Source of the DNA: Haliotis rubra
Taxonomy: Eukaryota
Assembly: GCF_003918875.1 (NCBI RefSeq)
Contig: NW_025767457.1
Coordinates: forward strand, 310,001 to 374,000
Length of the DNA stretch: 64,000 bases
Direction: 5' to 3'
How positions within the stretch are numbered: the stretch's first letter is position 1; every line of letters starts with the position of its first letter. Positions 2,063 through 60,525 of this stretch are shown piece after piece. A program made the position numbers and the translations under genes. Under the pieces are notes generated by a model. That model ran no database searches. It had not been told where the DNA came from and was given only the letters and a program-made list of their open reading frames with translations.

Positions 2063-2885
2063 TGTCAGCAAATAGCATCCTGTAGATTGAAGAGGCAAAA
2101 CACTCCTGTAACTTGGTGACATCAAACCATATTCACCAAAACAGTTGACCTCAAAGTTGACCAAAACCTAAATCACGATAACTTGTACAAACACAAACTA
2201 GATAGCCAGTCATTGATCACAGAGCTTGGCATCAGCATATCTATTCAAATTTACCATGGCATATTCATATATCAAACAATAGTGAGTGAGTTAAGTTTTA
2301 TGCCGCTTTTAGCAATATTCCAGCAATATCATGGCAGGGGATGCCAGAAATGGGCTTCACACATTGAACCCATGTGGGGAATCGAACCCGGGTCTTTGGC
2401 ATGACGAGCGAACACCTTAATGACTAGGCTACTCCACGGCCCTATATATCAAACAATAGCAAAATATATTCTTCTGTTGGGGTATAGATAAAAAAGTATT
2501 ATAAACACAAGGATGCAAGTTGGCACAAGCTCCTGGGCTCAGTCTGATCTAAAGAGGTATCATGGGATATTGCAGAATTTTAGGCTGTATAGGGGTAGTC
2601 TTTAAATGTAAACAATATGCTGGCAGGCATATGATTCAGTTCAAGCTGCATCCTTGAAACCCTTTCTGAGAAGCAAAGCACTAAATATATTTGTGTTGCG
2701 ACAAGTTCATAAAGGGCCTGTGTGGTACTTTTTAGTGTTTGCTTTTATTAAATGTCATACTCAGCATCATTTCATCTTTATGATGATGACCTGTAAAAAA
2801 GTGATTCAGGAGCAGACAATTCACTGATAGATACATTATGCATTGAAGCATGCTATTTAGCATGCCATCCCCAGACTTTCATAAC

Positions 2886-3250
2886 CAGAGATTTACCTCG
2901 AGTCCTGTGTTTGAGGGTCCCTGGGACTCATGCTTATAATTTTCAGGGGTCCTGGACAACAAAATGGGGGTCCGTGAGACACTTAAATATTTTTACTAAT
3001 ACTGTTATTGTATTGTGCATCATGACCATCACATTAATTGTTATAGTAATGAAATTGCAAATGATACCATAACTCAGCTAGTAGCAAACTCAGTGATAAC
3101 TTATTGTTACTTGATTGGAATTACAAATACAAATACAACAGTATTTGGACTTTTTCTGCATCCCTGTGGATGTGCTAATAAATTTCGTTGCGTCCATTGT
3201 GAATTTGTATGCGTATAGGACGCAGGAATGCGCATCCTGTAAAATCCCTG
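2886..3250. mobile_element. non-autonomous DNA transposon fragment (CAGGGATT-type termini, hAT-like)
   Basis: gatttacctcgagtcctgtgtttgagggtccctgggactca recurs inverted near 12695-12744 in a related copy (12412-12744). Confidence 0.5.
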
Positions 3251-4379
3251 CATAACCCTTGAAATGGGTCATTGGTCCTTTTGTGATTTTCACCAGTGAG
3301 TGTGCATCTTCCACATGATAGGAGGAAAAGTATTGGCCAAGTTGAGGTATTCAATTTGAAAAATCACTCACAATCATACTCATCTATCACTTCTTTTTAG
3401 GGACTATGAGGAGTTTGGATATAGATTTGGTCTATGTTTGGAATAGTATGTTGCACACACTCAACATAGTGAATGTCCTGTGGGGGGGTGGGGGTGCAGC
3501 CTAGTGGTTGAAGTGTTGAACCTGAACACCCAGGTTTGATTTCCCACATAGGTACAAAATGTGTTGCCTATTTCTTGTGTCCTCTGGCATGGTATGCTGG
3601 AATATTGCTATAAGCGGTGTAAAACCTTACTCACTTACAGAATATCCTAAATATAATGTGTTGTGATTCATACAAATTGTCTGGCTAATGCATTCTGTAT
3701 AACTGACTGACTGAGTTTGGTTTTACGCCGCTTTTAGCAATATTCCAGCAACGTCACGGCAGGGGACACCAGAAATGGGCTTCACTTTCTGTATAATCGC
3801 ATGTCTTGAAGTGGTATAAACAAAAATGCACATGATGTCTCAGACAAATGCCCCCATACTTCCTGGAATATTACAAGGCATGGTTTGTCCCTCATATTCT
3901 ACTTCTGAACCATTTATAAATGAAAGCAAGCATTTCACCTGATAATATACAAAACACTCTTGGTATGCACAGTTCACCTTGATCATATGAGCGTTTTATA
4001 TACGTCCATCAGTAACGGGTGATTGTTAGCAACCTAAATAGATGGTATCTCTGTTTATTGGTTCTGATGAATGACAGTATCACTGATCGTAATTTACGTC
4101 TGATTGTGATACATTCACTGATCGTCATATATCCACTGACCACTCGTAAACTGACTTTCAAACTTACAACGCAATCTGCTGTAATGGCCAGGAAAGCAAC
4201 TGCATAGTATGTAAACGCAAGAATGATGACGAAGCTAAATGATCATATGTCTTGACTTGAAGTTGAAACAAGACGGTTCTTGCGAACGCTTGCTTAATCG
4301 ATAGGTAAATTCTCGGAAAACCTCGCAAGTGCCCCCAATGCTATGTAAACAAAGTGATCGCCGTAACTATTTGACTCAC

Positions 4380-4568
4380 TTTTCAAACTGAACAGAACAC
4401 GGCTATCATAAAATGCAACTCTAAGCCACCGACGAATATTTTCTGTTGCAACTGGGAAGTGTTACTTTCTGTTTAAAGCATCTTTCCCCTCTTTGAAAGT
4501 CTCGCGTGTGACTTCCGTCGATAACTCTCTACTTCCGGTCTTTTCCTAGCGGCCATTAAGACCTCAAA
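4380..4568. promoter_or_regulatory. bidirectional promoter with ETS sites and a TCT/5'TOP initiator for RPS24
   Basis: ACTTCCGT (4511) and ACTTCCGG (4531), then the polypyrimidine initiator tCTTTTCC (4539-4546) about 30 nt before the RPS24 ATG. Opposite-strand donor at about 4380. Confidence 0.75.
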
Positions 4569-7500
4569 ATGGTACATGTGATGTGCTCTTGAAAATCCAA
4601 ATATATCTCTTAATATAAAGATAATCAATGTTATTAAGATAACTCACTTCATACGTTTACATCTTCACGCATTATATACAAAACTTTAAGTTTGGAAATG
4701 ATTTTGTAAACGTTGTATTTATCGTGTCAAATATGTCAACAACGGTAGTGGGAATTTCGCAGTGTGTTATTGCAGATGAACAGCTATCGCTTACTCATGT
4801 ATTTTATTAAAAATATGAAGAACATTTGTTTTTCATTATGTTTTCTGTAATAATGTCAGTTATTTTCCGTTCACCCTCTGACATAGCGTAATGTTTTGGA
4901 TTTTAGAACGTGTCGTACGATAGACGGGGTGAAACATTTATGATGGTCTTATTTTTATTTTTATCTGATTTTAGAGCACCAGGTCAGTGATAACTGTAAA
5001 ATATCGTACACAATGAAAAGTTGTGAACTGCAAATGAAAATTAATAGCTTTCTCCGTCAATTCAGTGCAGCAAACACAAATGACACTTCCCATTTAGCCT
5101 AACTAATTTAATAAGATTCCATCACATTTTCGCTCTTTTGTAAATATTAGCAAGCTTATTGGATTTTAAGGAATATATATTTGGAATTTAAATATTCCAT
5201 GTCAAATTCAAATTGCCATACCGCCATGTGACAGTTTAGTCATTTTCCATAACATTAACCGAGTTTAAAGCAAACTATTGAACTCTGATAAAAAGTATGA
5301 TTGGTTATCATAGCAAGAGCAATGAGTACCAAGAGTACTTTTGAGTACCTTATGTCCTTAAAAGTACTCTTGGTCACACTTCTAGCCAACACTTGGCGGC
5401 ACAGACGACCCAGTCACCTGGGGATTGCAATAAGTTTTATTCTGTTGATGTGACAGACGTCTATGATTGTAGAATCCAGGGATGAGAATTTTCCGCGGAA
5501 TTCCAGGAATTTCATTAGGCCAAGGGTCATATTTGTGAATCGTCTAAATCCGTATAATTTGGCCTCGATTTGGCCCCTGGCTAGTTTTCAGAGTTGTTCT
5601 CAAAACTTCATTCTCATCCCTGAGAATAGTTTGGCTTCATTATGTTTCTAGGGTTGTCAACTCGTACTCCTAGGTGTCACCATAGTGATAAACATCTGCA
5701 TCAGCACTGGCATTCCTCTTACATCAATTTGACATACTGTGATATGATTGACTTACAGTTGAGCAGAATTAAGCTTGCTATCAATCACTGCTTTCTCACT
5801 GGCATTGAAAATCTGTGTCTGACGTTCGTATTCATGTACTTCAACATTTGCAAATTACTTTTTGCAGAGCGAAGGTGCGGCCACTATCAGAACGCGGAAG
5901 TTCATGACCAACCGCCTGCTCAGCAGGAAGCAGATGGTATGAATTGTTTGAAATTCATATAAAGTTATATTTATAATACCAGGATCTTGCAAAGCTACTA
6001 ATGTCATTGTAATTTGTGTTCCTTGTTAATACTGCAACTATTCAGTGTTTTCATTGGGGCTGGCTAAAGAGATTGATATAAATCTTGAATATCAGCGATG
6101 AGAAGATTTGTGAATGATTATCGATATGAATATTGTGTCATTGCTACTGTCGAACAGAAACTATTGTGATGAAATATACTATTATTTTACTCCCACAATG
6201 CACAAAACTATGTCTATTCTTTTTACGTTTTGTTCATGCTTGTAACATAAGTGCTCAAAGTTAAAGATTAAGGGGCCTCTAGATGCAAAAACTATAGCAG
6301 CAAAACATATCCAGAGGACACATTTTTAATTAGCTTTTAGATTTCAGGATGTTTGTTCTTATGCTTGTACTGATTTTCCTACTGATTTCTTGTTTATTTG
6401 AAAGTGCAGTTTGTATTTCTGTTTGGTGAGATGTTTGAGGTAGAATTCTATCTGTTCTAGGTTGTGGATGTAATCCATCCAGGCAGGGCTACTGTTCCGA
6501 AAACTGAGATTCGTGAGAAGTTGGCCCGCATGTACAAGACAACCCCAGATGTCATTTTCTGCTTTAGTTTCACTACTCACTTTGGAGGTGGGAAAACCTC
6601 AGGATTTGCCCTGATCTATGACACCCTCGATTATGCTAAGAAGTTTGAGCCCAAATTCAGATTAGCAAGGGTAAGTAAAAGTTTGATGAATCGTGAATTG
6701 TTTACTTCAGTTTTGTCATTTCACTTGTTTATACTGCATAAACAACCATGGAGTGTCCCAGCTGTATGTGGTACCCCAACTTGTTGTGCTGAATTGACAC
6801 AATGGTGGGGTCAAATCCATGTTCGCCCGAATGTACGTTGTCAGCATTGTACCGTGTATGTGGTTTCACCTGAGTGGTAAACATCTGAGACCATCATCAC
6901 ATAAGGCTTTCCTCCCATGTGAAGTTACCATGGTAGAACTGGCATACTGTTCAAAGCGGAGTTAAACCAATGTTCTTATTGTAACCATCGGCAGATATTT
7001 CCGTTGCTTAGACCTGTTAGGGTCCGGGTGAGAATATTGATCTTCAGTAACCCATGCTTGTCGTAAGAGGCGACTAACAGGATCGGGTGGTCAGTCTCGC
7101 TGACTTGGTTGACACGTAATCGGTTCCCAACTGCGCAGATCAATGCTCATGTTGTTGATCACTGGATTGTCTGGTCCAGACTCGATTATTTACAGACTGC
7201 CGCCATATAGCTGGAATATTGCTGAGTGCTGTGTAAAACTAAACTCACTCACTCACTCACTCCATGTTGCTCATGGTTATATGGTCTGATTGTTTTAGTG
7301 TGTGATCTGGCTAATGATGTGTTACACCCCATAACAAATTGCACTGATTTCCTTTATGTGATAATTGCAGAGTTCGGGCATGCTTGTTTACTGTCTGTCA
7401 GTGTCATTAAATAAATTTTTAGTTACCCTTTACTTTATCTGATCTTTTTATTAGCTGTCGTCTTTTTTATATGAAATGTTCTAATAAAGAGACCTGAGCA

Positions 7501-8287
7501 ATTGTTTGTTTCTGTGTTTTCAACCTGAAATGTGAAACTATTTGCTACAATTATGTGGTTACAGCATGGCCTAGTGGAAGTGAAGAGAACAGGAAGAAAG
7601 CAGAGGAAGGAGAGGAAGAACAGACAGAAGAAAGTACGGGGAATTGCGAAGGCCAAGATCGGAGCTGACAAGAAGAAGGTAAGGAGTCCATATCTCACTA
7701 ATAACATACATTTGTATATGATTTGGTGGGGAGTGTTAATGCTGGTTTATTCAACAGCTGGCCTGTCTCAAGTTGTAATTTGCAAATATTAGTTTCATGT
7801 TATAATATATATTTAGGGTCAGTTACTCATAGTGGACAGGTGACTTTTTGAAGTCTTATACAAAGTACAAGAAATTTATTTGGGCCCAATTTTATTTATT
7901 TTATTTTGTGGCATGGTTCAAGTGAGAGTTTAGTACTTCCTCTGTTATAGCATATGTTTAATATTTTGGATTGGATCAGTAGGAGCTGTGTTGGATCAGT
8001 TTGTTACAGAGCAAGACAGTTATCTATTGTGAAGTAGGAACAGTCCTTGATTACTTTCCACATGTATTTTGGCAGTGGGGTAGCCAATTGGTTCTGGCGT
8101 TTGCTCATCACGCTGAAGACCCGGGTTCCATTCCCAAAATGGCCACAATGTGTAGCCCATTTCTGGTGTCCCCGGCCATGATATGACTGGAATAATGCTA
8201 AAAGCAGTTCAAAACTATACTCACCCATATGTATTGATTTAACTCGCAATATTTTTATGTATAATTTATTTTGCTTTGCAGAAGTAA
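4569..8287 (+). CDS. RPS24: 40S ribosomal protein S24 (eS24)
   Basis: Exons 4569-4571 (ATG only), 5868-5936, 6461-6670, 7565-7678, 8282-8287 (AAG TAA), all GT-AG and in frame: [50 protein letters not shown]...[14 protein letters not shown]...[25 protein letters not shown](K). AATAAA at 8334. Confidence 0.97.
7015..7262 (+). mobile_element. SINE family B (about 270 bp; GTCGTAAGAGGCGACTAA core, (ACTC)n tail), representative copy
   Basis: Related copies at about 520-680(-), 15545-15705(-), 25501-25747(+), 38678-38912(-), 42120-42389(-), 48700-48964(-), 54355-54597(-), 54712-54945(+), 55340-55533(+). The core resembles the Nin-domain SINEs of molluscs (from recall, not searched). Confidence 0.85.
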
Positions 8288-8911
8288 ACATGGTGCACAC
8301 ACCAGGTACATGGTTTGACAGTTTCTGCACTCCAATAAATAATGCTTGTTTGATGTGATGTGAAGTGCACTAATGCTTGCTACAATAACATGCTCATCTT
8401 CATCCTGTGCAGCTTCACTAATACAGACTAACATGTTCACTTAACAGAGTTAGAGCTACCATTTAGTCCAGCAGCCTAATCAAGTGCAAGTCTGCTACAG
8501 CTTGTTTTCTCCCAGAATTTACTGAGTTAACATTAACCTAAGTCCAAGCTGTGGGCTAGGCTAGTTGAATTTAAGCTCATGGTTACTAGCCGTGGAGCAG
8601 TGAGGTAGCCAATAGGTCGCTCGTCACGCCGAAGATCCAGGTGCAGTTCCCCACATTGATGCAATGTGTGAAGCACATTTCTGGTGTCCCTGCAGTATTG
8701 CTAATATAGCTGCACAATCTTCGCTCACTCACTCACTCACTCTGTGAAGATAGTATGAGTGCACACTTGTTTGATTTACGATAGACTTGACTTGATTAGA
8801 ATGCTTTCTTTGCCTAGACATTTCATATAGACATTTAACCAAAGTTCGAAAATTGAGAGTGGCTCCTTAATGATAGCTTTTACAGTCATTAAATGTTATT
8901 TCACACATTAA

Positions 8912-9237
8912 GGGACTACTCATAATTTATGGCTAGGGGGAGTGATGATGATGTTATGGAGAAGCATGTACAATGTGAATGACCCCCCTAAGATTTAAGT
9001 ACAAAATAAGTGAAACACCCAAACCCCCACCCCCCCCCCCTGCATGTCATGTACAAAATCAATGCCCCCCATAATTTTCTAAGCATAATTTTAAACACAC
9101 TTTATGTACAAAATTGCTCCTCCCCATATGTGTATACAAAATTTATTACCCTGCCCCCCAATAAAATAAATAAAAATGGGTGACCCCTTAAAATCATTTT
9201 CCCCTTCCTCTCCTCCCTCTTTCTTCTTCTCCTCTCC

Positions 9238-9313
<76 letters not shown>

Positions 9314-9339
9314 CCTAGCCATAAATTATGAGCGGTCCC
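8912..9339. mobile_element. PIF/Harbinger (Tourist-like) MITE containing a (CA)n microsatellite
   Basis: TIR GGGACtaCTCATAATTTATGGCTAGG / CCTAGCCATAAATTATGAGcgGTCCC with TAA on both sides. Confidence 0.75.
9243..9311. repeat. (CA)n microsatellite
   Basis: About 34 uninterrupted CA units; explains the CVCVCV ORFs. Confidence 0.97.
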
Positions 9340-10126
9340 TAATAAGTCTGAAAATATGTAAACGATAAGTGAAGTGATGTTTTGCATGTGTTTATTGTCT
9401 AGTATTTTCATTGCATGCAGTGTATTTTTGTCTGGATAAGTTTTCAGATTTTAATTGTAATTTAACACAAGATCTTATGTTCAAAGTGGTGTTCCTTGAA
9501 TACTGGATCCAATGTTCAACAGTGTTTGTCTTTACTAGAAGACGCATTAAAGGGGGTGTATATTATTACAAGATCTAACATTCAAGGGATTTTAACTTCA
9601 ATACGATTTCAAATATTCGAGGGGAATTGTCTCTGGAGCATGAGCTGTTCATTGAAAGCATTTGAGTTCATTCAAATTATGGCCAGTCTCATAGTTGCTA
9701 CTTGTTACAGTTGATACATACTCATGGGAACACATGAAAGTACAGGTGTTCCTTTATTTATATCCAGAATTCCACTCACATTGCAATAAAAGCATGTGAA
9801 GAACCCTGGAAAAGAGTATAGGAACACTTGTACTTTCATGTGTTCCCTTAGTCGTTTCCATGAGTATAGCTTAAAGGCTTATTGCTATTTGTTTGAGTTG
9901 ATATAGCTTGATAGCTTATTGCTTGAAACATTGTGATATTCAGTTATTGTTGTGATATATTTGAATGTTGTACCACCAGTTGCTTTGACATCTTTTCACC
10001 AGCTTGCATAATAACCTTCTTTGTGTAACATCTCAGAATCTGCATTGACTTTGTAGCTGAAAGAGTGATTATACCCAAGACTGCTACATTCTTTTATAAT
10101 CTTGTCAAGGTCCTTGTGTTAACATA

Positions 10127-13561: not shown

Positions 13562-15231
13562 TACGGAAGCGCTGAAGGGACCTGATGAAATAAAATTTAT
13601 CTTGAGAGCACGAGTTCATATATTGAGTGCACAAGTTAATATATTGAGCGGACGAGTTAGTTTTCTTGAGCTCACAAGTTAACATCTTGAGCAGATAAGT
13701 TAGTATGTTGAGCGCACAAGTTAATATCTTGTTTAGCATCTAATGGCATTAATGGAACGCACGTTTGCTTGACTGCTGGCTAAATGTACAAACTTGTATC
13801 CTTTTTGGAAGATTTCAAACGAGGCAAAGTCGGAGTTAACTAGGTGGTTATGATGAGACTATGTAAAGTATGCAATTTTATCATGAACATTGATAATGTT
13901 TATCATGTAAACGTTCATCGTCTTTATGCTTGTCAATACTATTCTTTGTAACTGGTTTTACCACTTTTTGCTTTATAACATAAAGCAGGCTCTGGTATGT
14001 GTAATGTGATAATAAGAGTTAAAACATAAACATGAGTAGGAGTTTATTGCAGGGATGAATAGTGGTTTTACTGACTTCTAATATTGGTACATAGTATTAT
14101 ATGAACAGTAGCTTGAAGCTTGGATAACTTGTTTTGTGCTACGGCTTTATTATGTATATATAGTATTACAAGACCATGAAAAATGTAAACATTGAGGGTA
14201 AAACTTGATGTCAGATGTATTCTAAGTTAAGTCGACCGCTTTCAGGGAACTATTTAGCCTGTAGTCTTGGTTTGCATGTATCAGTAACTGTTTCCTAACG
14301 TGGGTACAATGGCAGTTTAACTCTGTACAATATCATATAAACCAGCCTGGTTTATCTGATCCATTAGTATGTGCACGTATAGCACATATATCGACTTTAT
14401 TTCTTATTTAAATACCATGTTCCCGTTTTACTTCATCCGTTTCAATCCCGTACGTATACGTATGTGTGTTGTAGTGCATCTAACGATAACCATGTCTTTG
14501 TCCAGATCGTCGAAGTTGTCCGCAATAAAGTCTGTAACATCAGCGGGGCGGTGGGGTAGCCTCGTGGTTAGAACGTCCGCCCGTCACGCCGAAGACATGG
14601 GTTCGATTCTCCACATGGGTACAATGTGTGAAGTCCATTTCTGGTGTCTCCCTGATGAAATTGCTGGAATATTGCTAAAGGTGTAAACAGTACTCACTCA
14701 CTCACTGTAACATCAGCAAATCTGGTATCTGGTGCGAAAAGAGGGACATCCACCTCAGAATACGCTTCAAGTGGCGTACTATACTATACCATGATTTTCG
14801 ACAAGAAGATGTGTTATATCTTTGTATTGGAACCAAGACTGAACTAAGCATGAATCAGCTCGCGTTTCCGCTCCCCCGTTGCTTCGACATGAACTGCTTA
14901 TGGAGTAGTGTATCTCAAGATACTAAGTTGAGCGCTCAAGATACTAACTTGTGAGCTCAAGATATTAACTTGTGCACTCAACATACTAACTTGTGCGCTC
15001 AAGATACTAACTTGTGCGCTCAAGATACTAACTTGTGCACTCAACATACTAACTTGTGCGCTCAAGATACTAACTTGTGCGCTCAAGATATTAACTTGTG
15101 CACTCAACATACTAACTTGTGCACTCAACATACTAACTTGTGCGCTCAAGATACTAACTTGTGCACTCAACATACTAACTTGTGCGCTCAAGATAAATTT
15201 TATTTCATCAGGTCCGTTCAGCGCTTCCGTA
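13562..15231. mobile_element. non-autonomous IS3EU-like foldback DNA transposon
   Basis: TIR TACGGAAGCGCTGAAnGGACCTGATGAAATAAAATTTATCTTGAG at both ends, followed by 21-bp subterminal repeats. Exact 6-bp TSD GTATAA at 13556-13561 and 15232-15237. TAY..RTA termini with a 6-bp TSD match the IS3EU definition. Confidence 0.8.
14912..15195. repeat. 21-bp tandem array (ctcaagatactaacttgtgcg), subterminal repeat of the foldback element
   Basis: About 13 copies here; about 6 diverged inverted copies at 13600-13730. Confidence 0.92.
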
Positions 15232-16349
15232 GTATAATGCAAAGAAAGAGACGTGTAAAAACACCTACACCGCAAGTGCTGCTCCAATTTATATTGTTTA
15301 CTTTCCGTCTGACGTAAGCAAGTGCTCGTTCTATCAACAGGCTCAACCGCTCAGACTCCACCATTTACAGGTCAGATGAAACATTCTCTTATGTACTGAC
15401 ACACAGGACTCGAGTGTGCGTGCGTTCCTGCATGTGCGTATAAATATTTATATAAACACTTTACCGCACTCCACCGTTTCAATATATATAGAAGATGTAC
15501 GATTAGGTGAACGATTTCTGCTCTTAGAAAAGGGGTTTTTTGCGTTTGACGTTTAATGCCGCACTCAGCAATATTCCAGCTGTACCACGGCGGTCTGAAA
15601 ATAATCGAATCTGGACCAGACAATCCAATGGTCAACAGCACGAGCATCGATCTATTCAATTGGGATACGATGCCATGCATCAACTAAGCCAGCGAGCCTG
15701 GTCAGCAATTGTCAGCAATTTTATACTTAATATTTTACAATATTATGCTTAAAAAATATGGGAAGAGGAATGGGGTGTCATTGATTTGTACATGATATGC
15801 AAAGGAGGAGGGGGGGGCACCTACAATGTACATACATTTTTAGGGGTGGGGTCATTCACATTGTACATGCTTCTGCATCAAAATCATCTTCAGCCCCCAA
15901 GCCATACATTATAGGGACTAGCCTACCAGTTCTTGCTTTGTCATGTCAGAGAGAGTGCCGCCGAGCGCCAGGGTTGGTAAAACAAATTCTATCTTTAAAC
16001 ATATTTTGGTTTGACACGGTCAGGGATCGAATCACCGACACCAACTCTTTAGCCAATTAACTAATACATGTTACAACAGTCCTTCAAAGATTAGATAATG
16101 CAGTGTTCAAGTTGCTGCATCCCAGTCTAATACGACAATGTAAAAAATTTTATTTCTCAATCCATAGTTCTGTACAATTTCGTGTCCACTAGGCTGTCCC
16201 ACCGCCCAGTGTCACTAGAGAATTGGTCCATACAGCAATAAATATGTGAGTGGAATTTGTAAGTGTAACAGTTAAAACATATTGAGACAGAGATGAAAAA
16301 TTATGTCACATGGATGAGAGTTATCTCCCCTCGGTCGCTCCTGACAAAT

Positions 16350-17741
16350 ATGGCGGCGAAAGAAATAAGCAGACGTCTGCGTCAAAGACAAATTATAAAT
16401 ATCGACGGATCAAAAGTCAATTCTTACAGGTAAATAAGCTTAACATCTAACAACAACCTACGTTTTGTTTTAATTGATGTTTTACTCTGATATAAGCATT
16501 ATTTGGTAGAAACGTTAATAAAGATTCCACGTGGGACGGCACGTTGCAAACTCACCGGTGACGCCTGAATTTGTACCCCGTGAAACTTAGTAAAGTAGTT
16601 TCAACTTATTTAATTTTAGTTGGGGAAAAATACATCTTCAATTTGTTTTTGTATCATTACTACACATGAGATTAAACGTTATTTAAAAAACATTCTTCCT
16701 TTACATCCAGATCCTGATTGACAGATTTATCATTTACAGAGACTTGGCTGATGGGCGTAGACTTGTGGTAAGGCCAGTACCTCCAGTCAAAAAAGAAACA
16801 TGGACACCTGGGTTGTATCCCATTAGAATTATCGACCGACCAAGGACAGGATTTTGCCGGGTTCATTACAGTGGTATCTAATTGAATGACATAACCTAGT
16901 GGTTAGTGGTAAAGTGTAGAATTTCTACAAAACACTAGTACCGATTTATTCAGCGTTTGTGTAATGATAGTTTAACTAAGTTCTGCTGGGACCAGCACTA
17001 AGGTCCGAACTGTAAAGAAAACCGAATTACCCAAGGTCCGAATATGACAGATTCCACTGTATTTTGTTTGAAGATGTTTGGAACTTCTAAAACGTACTTT
17101 ATCCGACAGATATTTGTAAACTGTGTTTCTGAAACTGAATTTCTGCGCCCAAAATGGGCCTTTTTGTGTTTAGTATTTTTAAAATCACAATAAAAAATCA
17201 CAAAATATTTTCTTACACAAAACTTAAGAGATTTACTTTTTCAGGATGGAGCACTTCATATGACGAAGTAATTAAGGTTGAGGACATCGTTGACACTACT
17301 CCACCAGACAGACTACCACTTAGACAACTACAGATTGAAATAAAAGAAGCACTGAATAACTCACACACAGACAGCAAGTTGTTTATTCGAGTACCTATAA
17401 CCAGTGATGATTTCGAGGTAATTAAACAGATTGGTGAGGTTTACCAGACCAGGAGAGACAGAACAGTGTACGTGATCTCCTCCAGACAATGTTTAGAGCC
17501 CATACTGGGAGTCGGGTGGGATTACAGAGTCATCAATGCTCAAGGTGATAACTTTTTTGTCAAAACTGACACAGTCAAGTTTTGGTTTGGTAAGCGGAGG
17601 TCACTGGTTGATTTCACAGTCTTTCCAGACCACGTAGAGGAGTGTTTCCTCGATAGAGGCTATCAACTTTCATTCACCTTTGTCAAAGCCCCAGGAAACG
17701 TGTCCCGACTGAAAGATCTCCTCAATGCCACCAGTTTATAG
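16350..17741 (+). CDS. intact 3-exon gene, 236-aa protein with a chromo-barrel/Tudor-knot motif and an unknown C-terminal domain (transposon accessory protein)
   Basis: Exons 16350-16429, 16740-16873, 17245-17741 (phases 2 and 1; 711 nt) join without stops. The motif LYPIRIIDRPRTGFCRVHYSG|WSTSYDEVI spans the second junction and matches the VHYxGWxxxxDEW chromo-barrel signature. Confidence 0.8.
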
Positions 17742-17762
17742 TCATATAGGCAAGAGTCCAGC

Positions 17763-19836
17763 ATGAAAGTTACAGTTTTACGTCTCATCATGGTAGTCAT
17801 TTCAAAACTGACGTTATTTAACATATTGCAAAGTAACTTGTGGGAAAATCAGTTGACCAAAGAAAACATGGAATCTTTCATTAGCAAGTTAGAGGACGAA
17901 ATTGGTGTGTCTTATATTGTCAGCGAAAGGGAAAAGGACAATATGAAATCAGAATTATTCAGACTCAGAAAACAAGCAGCAACGTGTAAAAGGAAAGGTG
18001 GAAGGCAGTTCAGACATTTTTAGCCAATCTTTCTAAAAAGAATACAAGTGGAATGTAAGTATAGATGGACATCGCAGTGAATTAAAAGTTAATGAAATAA
18101 AACAAAACTTGGAGTGCATCATTGATAATTTAAAACATGAAAACCAGCAGTTAGAAACTAAACTAGTGGAAGCACTAAAACCCGAATGTAAACTGAAAAG
18201 TAAAAGGCTCCCAGACGGTCCAGGACAGAGATCGGAAAAGGAAAATACTAGCTGACTGTACTCACTCTTATGCAAAGAAAGGAAAAATTGAGCAGTGTAA
18301 GGATGCACTACCTTTTGTTGAAGAGGACAACACCAAGGTTTTGTCAATACTAATAGAAAAGGGTGGCAAACACGATGAAATTATCCTTGAAAAAGACAAA
18401 GAAATAAGGAAAGACAGCTTGAATAGACTCTTTGTATGTATTAGATGTGTTTAATGTAAGCAAATAATGCTTATCATGAACTTACTATGCTGTTCAAAAA
18501 TCTTCCCAGATCTCACAAAATTAAAGAGACATATTCGCAGTTAAACAGTAACTTTATCATAAAGGAAACTCCAGACGGATTAGGATATGAACAGTCACTC
18601 GAGAGCGGTTACATGCTGTTGTGCCAAATTTGATCGCAAATGACCCAGATGCTTATATTGACGGGACATGTCTTAAAGTAAAAATCTCGGCAGATGGGAC
18701 ACGGATCGGGAAACACTTACATGATAACGTGGCTTTTACTTTTTATCCTTAACGATAGTAAATGTGGTTCTGCGCTGGGAAATTACCTCTAGCCATTGTA
18801 TGCACTAGGAACGACACTATGAACTTACTCAGGCCCTTTCCAATTTAAGGAAGGAAACAGATGAATTAAATGGAACGTGGATCTCCATAGCTGGTGTACA
18901 ATTGAAACTTACTCTTTTATCTAGGTGGAGATTATAAGTTCTTACTCATTGCTGTAGGAATAAGTTCTATTGCATCTCAACACACATGTATATACTGCAA
19001 GTGTTCAAAACAGGAACGTTATCGTGTCGAAGAAAAATGGTCAATGTCGGATCCAAAACAAAGGGGCGCGAATTGATTATAAGGCATCGAATAGTGACAA
19101 AATGCAGAGAAAACAAAAACTGATTAATTCTTTATCAAACGATCCTTTGTTTCCTAACATACCTCTAAGAAACGTGGTGATTGACCAACTGCATCTCTTT
19201 CTGAGGGTTACAGATAAGCTGTTCAGTCTTCTTTGTGTGTGAATTGAGACTGTTGGACAATGTAAAGACAAACACTTGTTTCAAAGCTGGCCTTGATAGA
19301 AATAAGCTTAAACACATGTCTAGACTGGAGAAACAATTAAAAGAAGCAGGGATAAACTTTGAATTTTTATCAACAAAGATACACGGAAAATAGAGTTTCG
19401 TGATTTGCAAGGTCCTGAGAAATTGAAACTCTCAAAGGTATTTAAAGCCCTCTGGAATTACTTGACGATGAAGAGAGGGCAGGCGTTATACAATCCGTCT
19501 GGGATGGGTTTCACTCCATAAACGATTTAGTGAAATCAAGTGCACCAAATGTGAATGAAGTGTCTTCTGAGATTAATTCATGGATCAAGTTGTATGTAGA
19601 TGCGTATCAGAGATGTGATGTTACCCCGCATATTCACATCCTTCAGCATCATGTTCCTGAACTGATTGGAATTCATGGAAATTTGATTGATTTACACAGC
19701 AGGGGCTAGAAAAACTTAACGATATCGTAACTAAACAGTATTTCAGAGCAAGTAATCATGGAAAACGTCCTTGAAACAAATACTCCAGAAGCAAAACCGA
19801 ATCACCTTGCTGGAGAATTATAAAGGGTCAAAATGA
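17763..19836 (+). pseudogene. frameshifted RAG1/Transib-like DDE transposase
   Basis: Motifs in order across frames: LKVKISADGTRIG (D at 18693), YLGGDYKFLL (D at 18930), CIYC (18987), PLFPNIPLRNVVIDQLHLFLRVTD, DLQGPEKLKL, VTPHIHILQHHVPELIGIHGNL, TQQGLEKLND (E at 19709). These are colinear with RAG1 KESCDG / GYDEK / CxxC / DALH / FHKTLAHVPEIIERDGSIG / EGNESGN. Confidence 0.8.
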
Positions 19837-22800
19837 AAACTGGCACACAGTTAACTTACTAGCTAGTTCGAGTGACGTAGACTGAGTGGTCTCACCTCAC
19901 AGAAGTGTTTAACATGCAGAGGAGGAAGTTTAACTAGTAAGAATTATGTTAAAAGTCTGATGTTTCCTCGCCGCGATATGCTACATGATATAGCACTCTT
20001 TGCCGACAGTCAAGTTTCTTTATTGGCATACATAATATCAAAACTTTTCTCTCTTTAATGGAACAAATGCACAGGAGCCGACTTCTGGATTACACTGTCT
20101 GCAAGAGTACAAATTCCTGTACTTTTAGTGGTTGTATTCGAGGAGGGGCTAAAACTCAGTAAGACACCTCACGCCAGAACTCAGCCTTACAACACTTTAA
20201 CCTCGACTTTAACTATGACCACAGTGAGCCCTGGTGGCGAAGATGTGGGTTTGAGACTCGCATCATTCAACCACGAAAGTAAAAGAATTTGTACTACTGC
20301 AGGTAGTTTGCTTTCTTTGTATTCTTGTCTTTATGGTTAACAGTTTTATTCTTTGGAGGGTAGATATGCTCTGTCAATGTTTTTTGACATCTAATTGAGT
20401 TTGCCTATTTAATGCAATTATATTGTCTTGTTTTAAGACTTATTTTTGTTCAAGCAAGCAATTCCGTGTTGATGTCGGTTGGGTAGGAGAGCTGAATGCA
20501 AAGAAGCCGTGCTTATGCTTGCTTTTGGTTTAGATGATAATTTTCACCACATGAAAAATAAATTTATTATTATCTTTTGTTATGAAATATACCTAAGGAT
20601 GAGGTATGATAGTTTCAGCTTGTGATTGCTGTGTGCAAGGTTGAGTAAACTCATGTTTGGATGAACGTTTAATATCATTCGGATGTTGTTTAGAAACCAA
20701 GATGTAAAGTGATTTGAGATAAAATATCAGTATATCACCGTGCGTCTGTATGTCCTCTCTCCTTTGAGGAAACCGTTATTTGATTTGAGAATGTTATTAT
20801 GTTTGGAGCACATCAAAATCTAGTCTGTATACGAGTGTGCTTTCAAATAATGTATGCGTACATGTTTCCTATTGCTGTGAATGAATAGCAATGTCCCATG
20901 TCGAAAATAACATTGTGAATGATAGCGTTAGGTTTATTTTTTAAATGTTTACAGTTTGACAAAGACAAAAACTTGATTTTTTCCGTTAACATAACGGAAA
21001 CAAAAAGTTAAACCATTTCTGGTTCGCCTTACTGTATTTACATTAAGTTTTGAGAGCTAAAAGGTAGCTGATCTTGCTTTTCGAACTTTTTTCATGTTTG
21101 TAGGGAACATCGATCAGTTTAGTGTTTTCAAATTTAGCTTCCTGGTTAAGGTAAAATACAATGAAGTCATTAGCCTCCTATGTTTCCATAAGAAATGAGT
21201 TTGTTAAAATTTTGTAGGCAATAATTACATGGGTTTTTTTAATTAAATGCTCAACACATAGATAAAACCGCTTCTTGAATGAGTTTAAGGTTCGGTGAAT
21301 AAAGTTAAGTCACTAATGGGATTGGAAATTCCATTTTATGGTTCATGTTATTTAATTTTTAGCTCCACAGGCCTGAAAGGCCCGATAGGCGTGTGGCATG
21401 GCACGCAATCCGGCGTCCGGTCATCCGTCTGCTCTAACAACTGAGTGCATGGGTCATATCTAATTTGCATATTTGACCTTGCTATGATCTTTACGCCTAT
21501 GTATTTGTGTGGGGATTGTTTGAGATATCCTCTTCCTCCAAACAACAAGAGACCCGAAGCTCACACTTTACATGTTCCACGTACTTTATCTTCGTCAGTG
21601 TTGCCCATGAGTAGTAAGCTGATGGTGTTTGTATTAGATATTAAAGTTGATCGCCAGCAGGCTACACAGCATAATTCACTTTCTCGCAGAGCCCGTAGCG
21701 CCGTTTTAATATGGTAAGTTGTTTGGTTTACCAATCTGTCATCAGGAAATGACATATAAATATATGTAGCAGCATGGAGTGCATTTATGTTGGATGAATT
21801 AATACAATAAAAGGAATCGCAAACATATCCTTGTGTTTTATTTTTACCTGTTTGAACCTGGATTTACCCGGAGTTAAACAGTGTTGGTGATGACAGCTAC
21901 ATTAGCATTATGAAAAGCAACGTGTAAAGGCATGAAACCTGTTTATTCAGTTTTAAGAGAAACTTTACATGAATGATTCTTAAGGGTAACAAATTGCATG
22001 AACACCGGTTATGTTATATTTGCAATTTTCCGTAAAAAGACGGTTTAAATATTTATGTTAGCGGTAATTAAAATATCGTATTAGGTAGCTGGAGAATTCA
22101 TCTAACTACACCAGCTCGCAATGGAAACTCTATGAATAAATGACCTGTGGAAAACGAAGTTTTGCGAGCACGAAAGTCTAAATGGAGCTGAACTCAATGC
22201 TACTGAAAAGGTTATTAAAATTTTATTCGTGATGTTTGACGGTTGAAAATATCGATGAACATGGGAAATGATTAGTTGTTTATTGTAAGCTAATAACTGT
22301 AAATGTCACGTTAGGTGCATCGGAGTAACCTGTATCTTGTTAAAATGTTATTTGCCATTAACCATCAGAAGTTACTGCTTTTGGTAACGGACATGGGGAT
22401 AACATGCAGAAGGGGAGATAACTCTGTCGCGAACAACTTTCAGTTGTGAAAGTGTCCCGATATGGTTATCTTGTCGTACACGTGTTGAGTGGCATTGGCA
22501 ATGACCATCCCAATGTGTCTCACTTTAATACACAATTCACGAATCTAACTAGTTGAGCATTTTGATGATACAGACTACATGGCTCATCTGGACATGCGTT
22601 ATCAAAACACTAACCCTGGTCAGCCAGATCCTACTCTCATGACTCTGTCTATGTGAGAGACCTGTTTTGACAGAATCTGGCTAAGTGAGAGGACACCCTT
22701 TGGGCAGAGCCTTTATTCACAACACCACGGATGCGCTTACCTGTGTCGAAGAATTGACATTGAGTTATAAGGTACAGACCATAGCAAAAAACATTACCAC

Positions 22801-56408: not shown

Positions 56409-58409
56409 GAAGCGGTGTAAGAATCTGTACCGAAACGTTGCATCATAATATAATAAAGATGTTGTCATCCATAAAGTATATTGCCTTTATTATTAGTTTT
56501 AAAGTTGATGATATAGATATATTAACCTTCGAAAATGTTGAATAGTCTAGTTTTGATCCGATGCACGAGCGTTTTCAGCTGTTTATAAAACGTGTCATTT
56601 ATAGGTACTGCAGTATGTTCAATTTGCTTTTAAATGTGACATGTAGCGAGGCTTGAGTTATGTTGTTAAGGCAAATGTGTGATGCTGAGGACGTTGTCTC
56701 GCGATACCTGTGTAACATGAGAAACAGGTGAAACTTAAACATTGGATGTGTCCAAGTCGTCAGTGGTGCCGTAATTCGTGGAACAGTTGCGTCCCTTTGG
56801 ACACTCAAGAAACCGACGTGGGTTCGAACCGCGTTTCACCCCTGTTATGTTCGTAAGTTTGTCAGCATTATGTCCTTACAAAATGGTTTCACAAAAAGTG
56901 GTAAACGTCTGAGAACAACATTACTTCGGGCTTTCCTCCCACAATCAGCAGACACGCTGTTATATGGCTAAAATACTGTTCAAATGTGCGGTAAAACCCA
57001 CTCACTCATGTGAACATTGAATACACAATGCCATTAAAAAATGGTCAAATGTAACATATGTTATGGATCACACTTTCTTAGCAAAGTACAGAATCTAGTG
57101 CTTTTGTTGGGTTGAGTCCCATCCGGGATTCGAACCCACACCCTCAGAGTCCGGCACCTGATCGCTATCAACCAAAGTCAACCAAAGGTACTAGAATCTG
57201 TACTTTACTGAGAAAGTGTAATCTCAAATATAACACATGTCATGTGAACATGTTAAATACCATTGACAATAGATTTACAAAAGCCAACTTGAGGTATCAT
57301 AGACCTGACCATCGTCAGAAAAATGGCTCATTTCCTCACAGTTTCCAATATCCAGTACTGTTGTCTCATGTCACCCCTTGAGATTTCAAATCCGTAAGGG
57401 CAAACGTAACGCATATCAACAGTGTTTCAAAACTCTCTGTAACTTCACAGTTTGACATTTTATGATAGGCCATACACGACCTACAACACCCTTAGTTTCA
57501 CGTTTAGCACTATTCCTAATGGGATTGGGCACAGACATGTTCACTTTCTAATTTCATGCAACAGTTCAGCATGCGTCCACGCCATGTTGTAGTTCCACCC
57601 ACTGAAGCGACGGGATAATTGCAGTTGTATAGACATATAGAAGCATACCTCCAAGGGCCTTCATGGATACCGCGCCTGCTGACAATTTCCCCGAGATGCA
57701 ATGAAATCCCCTTTAAGCACGGCGCTAACATCAGACCAAAGAGTACTCTTCTGGAAGACAGTTTTGATTAGTCACAACGTACTACTATCACAGAATCATA
57801 TAACGTTTTGGTGGAAAGTCGCATCAGCCAAAGGTTCCCCTGAGACACCACTTACCAGTAAAAGTGTTTCGTTTCACCCATTGCTTAAAACCTATCACGA
57901 AAGTGAATTTTTGGTGGACAGTTTTGTGACCGTCTAAAATTAGGAGAATGCCCTTTTAATCACTTTACTTGACGTTGCCCCGCAACGTTCGGGCCAATGT
58001 CATTGCCATTTTGGATTAAAAACCTTTCATCTGGTCTTTGGAGAGCGGTAAGGCAACCTATCACGATTTTCTATCACTAATATTCTTAATCGAATTGCGG
58101 TCTTATCACAGGGCGCCTTGAAGCGTGACATATAGAAGCTTTCTGGCGCTCTCCCTTCATCGCTGGGACGGCCTCTGACGTCTCAAGTTGTCTCGTCCCC
58201 CAGAACACTTTCATCATACTGTAGTTACTCTGGTAAAAATACAGCCATTGGCTTTTGGGCTTAAACATTACTTCCCCACATATACAAAGCCTCATTATGT
58301 TGTATTTCTCATTGACTCGAGGCGGAGACGGTCTATATGTTTGTATTTAGAATTGTGTGTATATTAGAGACGATGGGTTTATGAAAGACGCTGTGTATAT
58401 ATGATGGAA

Positions 58410-60525
58410 GGTGTGTGTATTAGAGATGCTGTGTGTATTGGATGTGTGAATATGAGGGAAGATGTGTGTATTAGAGATGGTATGTGTATTGGATGTGTGG
58501 ATATGAGGAAGATGTACGTTTTAGAGATGGTATGTGTATTGGATGTGTGAAAATGAGGGAAGATGTGCGTATTAGAGATGGTATGTGTATTGGATGTGTG
58601 AATATGAGGGAAGATGTGCGTCTAAGAGATGGTATGTGTATTGGATGTGTGAATATGAGGGAAGGTGTGCGTATTAGAGATGGTATGTGTATTGGATGTG
58701 TGAATATGAGGGAAGATGTGCGTATTAGAGATGGTATGTGTATTGGATGTGTGAATATGAGGTAAGATGTGCGTATTAGAGATGGTATGTGTATTGGATG
58801 TGTGAATATGAGGGAAGATGTGCGTATTAGAGATGGTATGTGTATTGGATGTGTGAATATGAGGGAAGGTGTGCGTATTAGAGATGGTATGTGTATTGGA
58901 TGTGTGAATATGAGGTAAGATGTGCGTATTAGAGATGGTATGTGTATTGATGTGTGATGAATATGAGTGTATTAAGATGTGTGTATTGGATGTGTGATTA
59001 GAGGGAATGGTATGTGGTATTGTATTGGATGTGTGAATATGATGGAATGTGTGTGTATTAGAGATGGTATGTGTATTGGATGTGTGAATATGAGGGAAGG
59101 TGTGTGTATTAGAGATGGTATGTGTATTGGATGTGTGAATATGAGGGAAGGTATGTGTATTAGAGATGGTATGTGTATTGGATGTGTGAATATGATGGAA
59201 GATGTTTGTGTATTAGAGATGATATGTGTATTGGATGTGTGATTATGAGGGAATGTGTGTGTATTAGAGATGGTGTGTGTATTGGATGTGTGAATATGAG
59301 GGAAGGTGTGTGTATTAGAGATGGTATGTGTATTGGATGTGTGAATATGAGGGAAGGTGTGTGTATTAGAGATGGTGTGTGTATTGGATGTGTGAATATG
59401 AGGGAAGATGTGCGTATTAGAGATGGTATGTGTATTGGATGTGTGAATATGAGGGAAGATGTGTGTGTATTAGAGATGGTATGTGTGTTGTGTGTGAATA
59501 TGAGGGAAGGTGTGTGTATTAGAGATGGTATGTGTATTGGATGTGTGAATATGAGGGAAGATGTGCGTATTAGAGATGGTATGTGTATTGGATGTGTGAA
59601 TATGAGGGAATGTGTGTGTATTAGAGATGGTATGTGTTTTGGATGTGTGAATATGAGGGAAGGTGTGCGTATTAGAGATGGTATGTGTATTGGATGTGTG
59701 AATATGAGGGAAGGTATGTATATTAGAGAGTGGTATGTGTGGATGTGTGAATATGAGGGAGATTAGAGATGGTGTATGTGTGATTATGTGTGTGATTATG
59801 GATGTGTGATTATGAGGGAATGTGAATATGTGTGTATTAGAGATGGTGTGTGTATTGGATGTGTGAATATGAGGGAAGGTGTGTGTATTAGAGATGGTAT
59901 GTGTATTGGATGTGTGAATATGAGGGAATGTGTGTGTATTAGAGATGGTGTGTGTATTGGATGTGTGAATATGAGGGAATGTGTGTGTATTAGAGATGGT
60001 GTGTGTATTGGATGTGTGAATATGAGGGAAGGTGTGTGTATTAGAGATGGTGTGTGTATTGGATGTGTGAATATGAGGGAAGGTGTGTGTATTAGAGATG
60101 GTGTGTGTATTGGATGTGTGAATATGAGGGAATGGTGTGTGTATTAGAGATGGTGTGTGTATTGGATGTGTGAATATGAGGGAAGGTGTGTGTATTAGAG
60201 ATGTGTGTATGTGTATTGGATGTGTGAATATGAGGGAAGGTGTGTGTATTAGAGATGGTGTGTGTATTGGATGTGTGAATATGAGGGAAGACTGTGTGTA
60301 TTAGAGATGGTGTTAGTAATATTGTGTGAACATCACGGTGTGGGACACCAGAAATGGGCTTCACACATTGTACCCATGTAGGGATTCGAAGGCGGGGCTT
60401 CGGCGTGACGAGCCAACGCTTTAACCATTAGGCTACCCCACCGCCCGTGAATATGAGGGAAGGTATGCGTATTAGAGATGGTATGTGGTATGCGTATTAG
60501 AGATGGTATGTGTATTGGATGCGTG
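58410..60525. repeat. 51-bp minisatellite array, interrupted near its end by a SINE (60315-60446)
   Basis: Unit gtattagagatggtatgtgtattggatgtgtgaatatgagggaagRtgtgY; produces the spurious 17-aa-repeat ORFs. Confidence 0.96.

What the first reader, a model, noticed from the sequence alone, without database searches (positions are those of the whole stretch)
16350..17741. Accessory chromo-barrel gene is intact while its partner transposase is broken
Seen: three exons with canonical splice sites and matching phases give 236 aa with no stops, while the adjacent 2-kb ORF has many indels. The signature is split by an intron, so the ORF track misses it. The last W of the usual DEW is V here, so the aromatic cage may be altered. 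The C-terminal region (LGVGWDYRVINAQGDNFFV...GYQLSFTFVK) matches no family I recognise. Inference: either domestication of the accessory gene or uneven sequencing error.
Basis: partly seen in the sequence, partly recalled or inferred. Interest (0 to 1): 0.7.

Follow-up and report, generated by a model that had tools for sequence, protein, structure and literature searches.

The report
Transposon helper gene, not a domesticated gene
The intact 236-aa gene is the first of two genes of a RAG1-like DNA transposon of abalone and scallops; it survives in this copy by chance and because the assembly has many indel errors, not because the host has adopted it.

Summary
The three-exon model (16350-16429, 16740-16873, 17245-17741) is real. 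It has GT-AG sites, annotated homologues in Haliotis, Pecten and Argopecten, and both intron positions and phases are conserved with scallop genes.

It lies inside a 6.19-kb element (16278-22464) with imperfect 54-nt inverted ends. The downstream gene is a RAG1-like transposase: a family profile hits RAG1 structures at E=8e-10. The order ORF1 then transposase recurs at 7 other loci, including an intact Argopecten copy.

Domestication is not supported:
- The inverted ends are intact.
- A 98-99% identical copy sits at another locus in H. rubra. There ORF1 is cut by a 1,061-nt insertion and the transposase is less broken (6 frame changes against 17).
- The ORF1 differences between the two copies are 3 non-synonymous to 1 synonymous.
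- No RNA run holds the stretch.

Most of the window's transposase breaks are 1-2-nt homopolymer length differences. The sister copy lacks them, and so do short-read contigs at the sites they list.

The V replacing the W of DEW is not a cage position; the Y-W-Y cage positions are kept. The C-terminal domain has no recognisable fold.

I found no published description of a RAG1-like transposon with a Royal-domain partner.

The parts
16278..22464 (+). One copy (6,187 nt) of a two-gene RAG1-like DNA transposon
   Evidence: Similarity to the H. rubra copy L002 starts and stops exactly at these positions and the flanks are unrelated. Short-read contigs break at 16277/16278 and some continue into a paralogous empty site.
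16278..16331 (+). 5' terminal inverted repeat: terminal block CATATTGAGACA, a variable spacer, and a subterminal block GAGTTATC at element positions 41-48
   Evidence: The same two blocks are found at the ends of the Argopecten copy L006, and similar ones (subterminal GAGTTACC) in L009.
22411..22464 (-). 3' terminal inverted repeat (reverse complement begins CATATCGGGACA; same subterminal block)
   Evidence: A 15-nt perfect inverted repeat joins 16317-16331 and 22411-22425. The ends are aligned. No target-site duplication is present.
16350..16429 (+). ORF1 exon 1 (26 codons plus 2 nt; basic N-terminus)
   Evidence: It aligns to Argopecten P0003 residues 5-20 with score 40 against a shuffle mean of 20 (0 of 500 shuffles reach it). 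The intron position and phase are conserved.
16740..16873 (+). ORF1 exon 2 (first strands of the Royal-family barrel, ending HYS plus the first base of the Gly codon)
17245..17741 (+). ORF1 exon 3 (rest of the barrel from W, a linker helix, and a conserved alpha/beta C-terminal domain of about 120 aa)
17763..19860 (+). RAG1-like transposase gene, broken by about 17 frame changes in the window
   Evidence: tblastn and frameshift-aware alignment to the intact Argopecten protein P0008. The family profile hits RAG1 and RAG1L structures.
19861..22410 (.). 3' part of the element with no detected coding capacity
   Evidence: There are no long ORFs and no tblastx similarity to the scallop elements.

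Best explanation
The 236-aa gene is ORF1 of a two-gene cut-and-paste DNA transposon whose second gene is a RAG1-like DDE transposase. ORF1 encodes a basic N-terminus, a Royal-family (chromo-barrel/MBT-like) beta-barrel and a conserved C-terminal domain of about 120 aa with no recognisable fold.

Shown here: the gene structure, its conservation, and its fixed position 20-100 nt upstream of the transposase on the same strand in abalone and scallop lineages.

Inferred: ORF1 is a transposition cofactor. Its barrel would read chromatin, probably methylated histone tails. Its C-terminal domain would contact the transposase or the conserved blocks of the element ends. In that role it would be comparable to RAG2 beside RAG1.

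The window holds one recent, non-functional insertion of this element. ORF1 is intact there for four reasons. It is a target one third the size of the transposase. It has half the density of homopolymer runs. Much of the apparent damage to the transposase is homopolymer indel noise in this assembly. The copy is young, with about 0.4% substitutions from its sister. It is not a host-adopted gene.
For: - Gene model.
- Element bounds and ends.
- Sister copy with the reversed state.
- ORF1 followed by the transposase on the same strand in L002, L003, L004, L006, L007, L009 and, more distantly, L010.
- Intact pair in Argopecten L006 (a 238-aa gene plus the 717-aa P0008).
- RAG1-likeness: profile A2 hits RAG1 at E=8e-10 and amphioxus RAG1L at 7e-6. 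The alignment covers the second catalytic D, the CxxC, the HxxxxH and the catalytic E motifs. There is also a sub-threshold Pfam RAG1 hit on P0065.
- Royal-family barrel: profile A6 hits L3MBTL MBT repeats at 6e-6, plant MRG2 at 1e-4, MRG701 at 3.5e-4 and MRG15 at 1.5e-3, and nearly all hits are Royal-family domains. Fold hits to chromodomains reach Z 3-4.
- Indel pattern.
Against: - No RNA evidence exists for any copy, so splicing and expression rest on comparison alone.
- The deficit of indels in the ORF1 coding sequence against the transposase is nominally significant (p=0.004 per nt, 0.04 per homopolymer run), so some unexplained unevenness remains.
- Only two Haliotis copies could be compared.
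- The proposed cofactor role is inference. Pfam scores for the barrel are below threshold and the structure models have moderate confidence (pLDDT 62 and 67).
Confidence: 0.78

Rival explanations
1. The accessory gene at this locus has been domesticated. The host keeps ORF1 under selection while the transposase decays.
For: ORF1 has 0 indels in 711 nt where about 6 would be expected at the rate seen in the rest of the element (P=0.002). NCBI annotates homologues as genes in H. rubra and Pecten. The Pecten locus keeps ORF1 with only a 24-aa transposase remnant.
Against: - Both element ends are intact.
- A near-identical paralogous copy exists with ORF1 disrupted.
- Coding changes between the copies are 3 non-synonymous to 1 synonymous.
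- The introns share the low indel density of the coding sequence.
- No RNA holder was found.
Confidence: 0.05
2. The contrast is entirely an assembly artefact. The transposase of this copy is intact in the animal, and the element is a live autonomous transposon.
For: - Lesions in the window are almost all frameshifts at homopolymers, with almost no nonsense substitutions.
- Short-read contigs lack every listed window-specific indel.
- The copies are 98-99% identical, which implies recent activity.
Against: The sister copy L002 agrees with the short-read contigs at all listed sites, yet it still shows about 6 frame changes against the intact scallop protein. The contigs may come from other copies or another individual, and only 12 of 44 indel rows were shown.
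Confidence: 0.14
3. The three-exon reading frame is a chance open frame or a mis-joined model with no function.
For: Pfam gives no hit above threshold. The short exons 1 and 2 give no BLASTP alignment to P0005.
Against: Exon 3 matches homologues at E=1e-35 to 1e-96. Intron positions and phases are conserved in four lineages. Exon 1 aligns to P0003 better than all 500 shuffles.
Confidence: 0.01

Closest known systems
Transib superfamily DNA transposons (Kapitonov and Jurka 2005, PMC1131882)
   Same: The transposase shares the RAG1-type catalytic core: the second D, the CxxC, the HxxxxH and the E motifs align to RAG1. The size is about 715 aa. The inverted ends are built from a conserved terminal block, a variable spacer and a second conserved block.
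   Different: No 5-bp target-site duplication is seen at four insertions. The ends begin with CAT, not the CAC that is invariant in Transib and in recombination signal sequences. A second, intron-containing gene lies upstream. The family profile did not hit the Helicoverpa Transib structures at E<=1, although it hit RAG1.
RAG-like (RAGL / ProtoRAG / TransibSU) transposons encoding RAG1L plus RAG2L (PMC4411706, PMC7204232)
   Same: It is a two-gene element in which a RAG1-like transposase is paired with a second protein that carries a probable histone-reader module. RAG2 has a PHD finger; ORF1 has a Royal-family barrel.
   Different: The partner is unrelated to RAG2: no Kelch or PHD hit was found. 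The two genes are tandem on one strand and 20-100 nt apart, not on opposite strands as RAG1L and RAG2L are. The element ends and the lack of a target-site duplication also differ.
MRG15 / Eaf3 / MSL3 chromo-barrel and L3MBTL MBT domains (Royal family)
   Same: The motif (V/I)HY-x-G-W-x-x-x-Y-D-E-(W/V) aligns to the HF/HY-x-G-W-x-x-x-(Y/W)-D-x-W core of these domains. Predicted strands superpose on chromodomains, with 29% identity to MRG15 over 38 residues.
   Different: Pfam scores are below the curated cut-offs. In Haliotis the last W is V. The domain is joined to an unknown C-terminal domain and is encoded by a transposon.
PIF/Harbinger transposons (transposase plus Myb-like DNA-binding partner); named from general knowledge, not tested here
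   Same: A DNA transposon that carries a second gene for a non-catalytic partner protein.
   Different: The transposase superfamily is unrelated, and the partner here has a Royal-family barrel rather than a Myb/SANT domain.

Membership tests
Royal-family chromo-barrel / MBT domain | Sequence similarity to known family members | tested here: met
   Profile A6, built from three scallop homologues, hits L3MBTL1/3 MBT repeats at E=6e-6, At1g02740 (MRG2) at 1.2e-4, MRG701 at 3.5e-4 and MRG15 at 1.5e-3. Eaf3, PHF20, MOF, MSL3 and TIP60 follow. Pfam single-sequence scores are below the cut-offs: MBT 20.1 against 22, and MSL3_chromo-like 15-19 against 28.
Royal-family chromo-barrel / MBT domain | Small beta-barrel fold | tested here: inconclusive
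   In the AF2 model of P0005 (pLDDT 61.6), residues 49-88 superpose on the ZMET2, CBX4, Polycomb, CHD1 and MRG15 chromodomains and the PHF20L1 Tudor domain. Z is only 3.4-4.1 over 36-40 residues.
Royal-family chromo-barrel / MBT domain | Aromatic cage positions (Y-x-x-W-x-x-x-W/Y before D-E/x-W) | tested here: met
   The window reads Y-S-G-W-S-T-S-Y-D-E-V. The cage residues listed for MRG701 (H37, Y42, Y62, W65, W69) correspond to MRG15 W49 and its neighbours (PMC5084153). The V replaces the residue after the cage, not a cage residue.
Royal-family chromo-barrel / MBT domain | Binding of methylated lysine | not testable with these tools
   This needs peptide arrays or ITC.
Transib superfamily | RAG1-core-like DDE transposase | tested here: met
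   Profile A2 against PDB sequences: the 16 best hits are all RAG1 or RAG1L, with E from 8e-10 to 7e-6. D314 and D393 are invariant in the family alignment.
Transib superfamily | 5-bp target-site duplication | tested here: not met
   The flanks of the window copy, L002, L006 and L009 share no duplicated bases. A paralogous empty site in short-read contigs fits a flush insertion to within 1 nt.
Transib superfamily | Ends beginning with the CAC of a CACAATG-like heptamer | tested here: not met
   The ends start with CATATCG-like sequences in Haliotis and in two Argopecten lineages. CAC is invariant in Transib according to PMC1131882.
RAGL (RAG1L-RAG2L) transposons | RAG2-like partner gene (Kelch propeller with or without a PHD finger) on the opposite strand from RAG1L | tested here: not met
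   ORF1 has no Kelch or PHD hit and lies in tandem upstream on the same strand.
Domesticated transposon gene | Loss of element ends and fixation at a single orthologous locus | tested here: not met
   Both inverted ends are intact. A 98-99% identical copy lies at a different locus. Orthologous sites in other species could not be examined.
Domesticated transposon gene | Purifying selection after immobilisation | tested here: inconclusive
   Only 4 coding differences separate the window from L002, 3 non-synonymous and 1 synonymous. This is compatible with neutrality, but the count is too small to decide.
Domesticated transposon gene | Expression | tested here: inconclusive
   No RNA run holds the stretch. 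Two probable RNA runs of the species laid nothing on it.

The most novel reading that the evidence does not exclude
This is a previously undescribed branch of RAG1-related transposons. It may be large: 1,481 cluster representatives match the transposase, though ORF1 linkage was checked at only a few loci. It has its own end sequences (CATATCG...), inserts without a target-site duplication, and has recruited a chromatin-reader partner independently of RAG2. If so, coupling a RAG1-type nuclease to a histone-mark reader evolved at least twice.
Probability: 0.3. Interest if true: 0.75.

Novelty: new variant of a known kind. Interest (0 to 1): 0.5.

Why it matters
The specific claim, an intact helper gene beside a broken transposase, turns out to be ordinary. 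It reflects decay of one transposon copy, exaggerated by indel noise in the assembly, and it shows why frameshift counts in repeats of long-read assemblies should not be read as biology.

The element itself is more interesting. RAG1-RAG2 is the textbook case of a transposase that works with a histone-reading partner. Here a RAG1-like transposase is consistently paired with an unrelated protein that carries a Royal-family barrel, and intact copies exist in a scallop genome. That gives a natural second system for asking why RAG1-type enzymes acquire chromatin-reading partners. It also allows a test of whether insertion without a target-site duplication is possible for this catalytic core.

Tried and rejected
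- Pfam on the separate exons gave only a sub-threshold MSL3 chromo-like hit.
- Pfam and PDB searches with single transposase pieces gave nothing or spurious hits, for example arginine kinase at E=0.009. Only the 21-sequence family profile reached RAG1.
- BLASTP of the 26- and 44-aa exon translations against P0005 gave no alignment. MAFFT misplaced them, so a local alignment with a shuffle control was used instead.
- Word-index protein searches found only six family members.
- The fold of the C-terminal domain was searched twice, once in the full-length scallop model and once in the model of the window's exon 3. The best Z was 3.7-4.0 to unrelated proteins, and Foldseek gave E>=0.016. No assignment was made.
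- tblastx of the 3' 2.6 kb of the element against the scallop loci found nothing.
- A more distant transposase locus, L008 (39% identity), has no detectable ORF1 upstream.
- No fusion of ORF1 with the transposase was found among 168 fetched proteins.
- Literature searches for Transib or RAG1-like elements with a chromodomain, Tudor domain or second ORF found no description. The library does not cover Repbase or subscription journals.

Full report
WHAT IS THERE

The window comes from an abalone. Exon 3 is 95% identical in protein to Haliotis rubra LOC124278357, and the DNA is 98-99% identical to an H. rubra contig.

The three-exon model can be read directly from the sequence:
- Exon 1 is 16350-16429, with donor GTAAAT.
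- Exon 2 is 16740-16873, with acceptor TTTACAG and donor GTATCT.
- Exon 3 is 17245-17741, with acceptor TTTTTCAG.

The total is 711 nt, or 236 codons plus a stop, with intron phases 2 and 1.

THE GENE IS REAL

Exon 3 finds annotated proteins in H. rubra (E=1.4e-96), Pecten maximus (1e-35) and Argopecten irradians.

Exon 1 aligns to residues 5-20 of Argopecten P0003 better than all 500 shuffles.

Both introns lie at the same codon and in the same phase as in the scallop genes:
- Intron 1 falls after the Y, inside the next codon, in phase 2.
- Intron 2 falls inside the Gly codon of HY(I/S)G|W, in phase 1, in the window, P0005, P0003 and P0002.

The scallop genes have one further intron that Haliotis lacks.

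IT SITS INSIDE A TRANSPOSON

Similarity to the H. rubra locus L002 begins exactly at 16278 and ends exactly at 22464, and the flanks are unrelated.

The two ends are imperfect 54-nt inverted repeats. Each has a terminal block (CATATTGAGACA on the left, CATATCGGGACA on the right), a variable spacer, and a shared subterminal block (AGAGTTATCTCCCCT, with GAGTTATC at element positions 41-48).

Short-read contigs break at 16277/16278. Some of them run straight from the left flank into sequence like the right flank. This is a paralogous empty site, because the element landed in a higher-copy repeat.

Similar terminal and subterminal blocks bound two Argopecten elements:
- L006 spans 2203-9527 and carries GAGTTATC, like Haliotis.
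- L009 has termini CATATCGTGAAA and CATATCATGAAA. A GAGTTACC block was seen near its left end.

None of the four insertions has a target-site duplication.

THE PARTNER GENE

From 17763, 21 nt after the ORF1 stop, runs a transposase-like frame. Single pieces of it hit nothing in Pfam or the PDB.

An exhaustive search with the best piece (Argopecten L003, 302 aa) found 1,481 cluster representatives at E<=0.001, and the full-length ones are about 700-760 aa.

A profile of 21 full-length members hits only RAG1 and amphioxus RAG1L among solved structures, with E from 8e-10 to 7e-6. The alignment covers the second catalytic Asp (GGDxK against GYDEK), the CxxC pair, the HxxxxH pair and the catalytic Glu. 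One member also gives a sub-threshold Pfam RAG1 hit.

The transposase is therefore RAG1-like. The element still fails two defining features of Transib: the 5-bp target-site duplication and the ends beginning with CAC (PMC1131882).

THE TWO GENES TRAVEL TOGETHER

ORF1 followed by the transposase 20-100 nt downstream on the same strand is seen in:
- the window and L002 (Haliotis);
- L003, L006 and L009 (three Argopecten lineages);
- L004, a contig from an Argopecten gill run;
- L007, a Logan contig with an intact 714-aa transposase;
- L010, in diverged form, where the transposase is only 36% identical.

L006 carries both genes intact, a 238-aa gene model and the 717-aa P0008. Pecten L001 keeps ORF1 with only a 24-aa remnant of the transposase. 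A 39%-identical member, L008, has no ORF1 upstream.

WHAT ORF1 ENCODES

A profile of the N-terminal domain hits almost only Royal-family domains:
- L3MBTL MBT repeats at 6e-6;
- plant MRG2 at 1e-4;
- MRG701 at 3.5e-4;
- MRG15 at 1.5e-3;
- then Eaf3, PHF20, MOF, MSL3 and TIP60.

In the AF2 model of P0005, residues 49-88 superpose on chromodomains, though only at Z 3.4-4.1.

The cage positions (Y-x-x-W-x-x-x-Y) are aromatic in the window. The V replaces the W after the cage, and both Haliotis copies share it.

The C-terminal domain of about 120 aa is the best conserved part. It has 12 invariant columns, including the G..WDYRV motif. It has no Pfam hit and no fold match in two models of moderate confidence.

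WHY ORF1 IS INTACT WHILE THE TRANSPOSASE IS BROKEN

Differences between the window and L002:

| Region | Substitutions | Indels |
|---|---|---|
| ORF1 coding sequence | 4 | 0 |
| ORF1 introns | 6 | 3 |
| Transposase | 22 | 20 |
| 3' part | 20 | 20 |

- The indels are nearly all 1-2 nt in homopolymer runs, and 30 of the 43 are extra bases in the window.
- A ratio of indels to substitutions near 1:1 is not what natural decay produces; I take this from general knowledge. It is typical of unpolished long-read sequence.
- Short-read contigs of the species agree with L002, and disagree with the window, at every substitution and indel the output listed. One 652-nt contig differs from the window by 0 substitutions and 14 gaps.
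- A frameshift-aware alignment to the intact P0008 counts 17 frame changes in the window, 6 in L002 and 5 in Argopecten L003, with almost no nonsense substitutions.

In L002 the situation is reversed. The transposase keeps a 342-aa open stretch, but ORF1 exon 3 is cut by a 1,061-nt element that has its own inverted ends and a 10-bp target-site duplication.

Statistics:
- ORF1 coding sequence has half the density of homopolymer runs of 4 or more (11 per kb against 22 per kb).
- Its lack of indels is nominally significant against the transposase (p=0.004 per nt, 0.04 per run).
- It is not significant against its own introns (p=0.12 and 0.54).
- The low density covers the whole ORF1 region, introns included (p=0.007).

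Selection on a protein would not spare the introns. The four coding differences are 3 non-synonymous to 1 synonymous.

VERDICT

The gene is ORF1 of a young, decaying transposon copy, and the contrast with its partner is inflated by assembly indels.

I could not decide whether the copy's transposase is dead, as the 6 frame changes in the short-read-consistent sister copy suggest, or fully intact.

The broader object is a RAG1-like transposon family with a conserved Royal-domain partner gene, its own end sequences and no target-site duplication. I found no description of it in the literature I could search.

The proposed role of ORF1 as a chromatin-reading cofactor is inference from domain content and conserved linkage.

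Noticed in passing
L002:10318-11378 (H. rubra copy): A 1,061-nt element with inverted ends (CATTCGTCACC ... GGTCACGAATG) and a 10-bp target-site duplication (AACAGTGTAC) is inserted in ORF1 exon 3. NCBI's 160-aa gene model splices it out as an intron.
   Followed up: partly
L001:10001-20351 (Pecten maximus LOC117344989): ORF1 with the canonical YDEW motif is kept, but only a 24-aa remnant of the transposase lies downstream, and one intron has grown to 9.4 kb. It could be a solo decayed copy, or a better candidate for host adoption than the abalone locus.
   Followed up: partly
L006:2203-2261 and 9477-9527 (Argopecten): The subterminal GAGTTATC block starts at position 45 from the left end but at position 37 from the right end, so the spacers are unequal by 8 nt. 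In Haliotis both start at position 41. This recalls the unequal 12/23 spacers of recombination signals, but I did not analyse it further.
   Followed up: no
window 16200-16277: The left flank of the element is itself a repeat. Short-read word depth is about 409 there against about 69 inside the element, and several contigs carry the uninterrupted (empty) version.
   Followed up: partly
window 14898-15317: Long ORFs on both strands are made of a repeating unit of about 8 aa (SAQVSMLS / CAQDTNLC), which indicates a tandem minisatellite of about 24 nt.
   Followed up: no
window 58001-62000: There is a strong GC skew, 0.745 in 58001-60000 and 0.24 in 60001-62000, far above the rest of the window.
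   Followed up: no
L004 (Logan contig of SRR23580857): The data-availability statement of PMC10989825 calls this Argopecten gill run a metatranscriptome. The 1.9-kb contig carries the last ORF1 exon, the spacer and the transposase N-terminus, with intron-like sequence upstream. If the run is RNA, it would suggest that both genes lie on one unspliced transcript. The paper's methods describe DNA sequencing, so the label is doubtful.
   Followed up: partly
window 17742-17765: Only 21 nt separate the ORF1 stop from the transposase ATG, and the spacer is 36-103 nt in the scallop and L010 copies. How the downstream gene is translated is unexplained; it could be through its own promoter, reinitiation or alternative splicing.
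   Followed up: no
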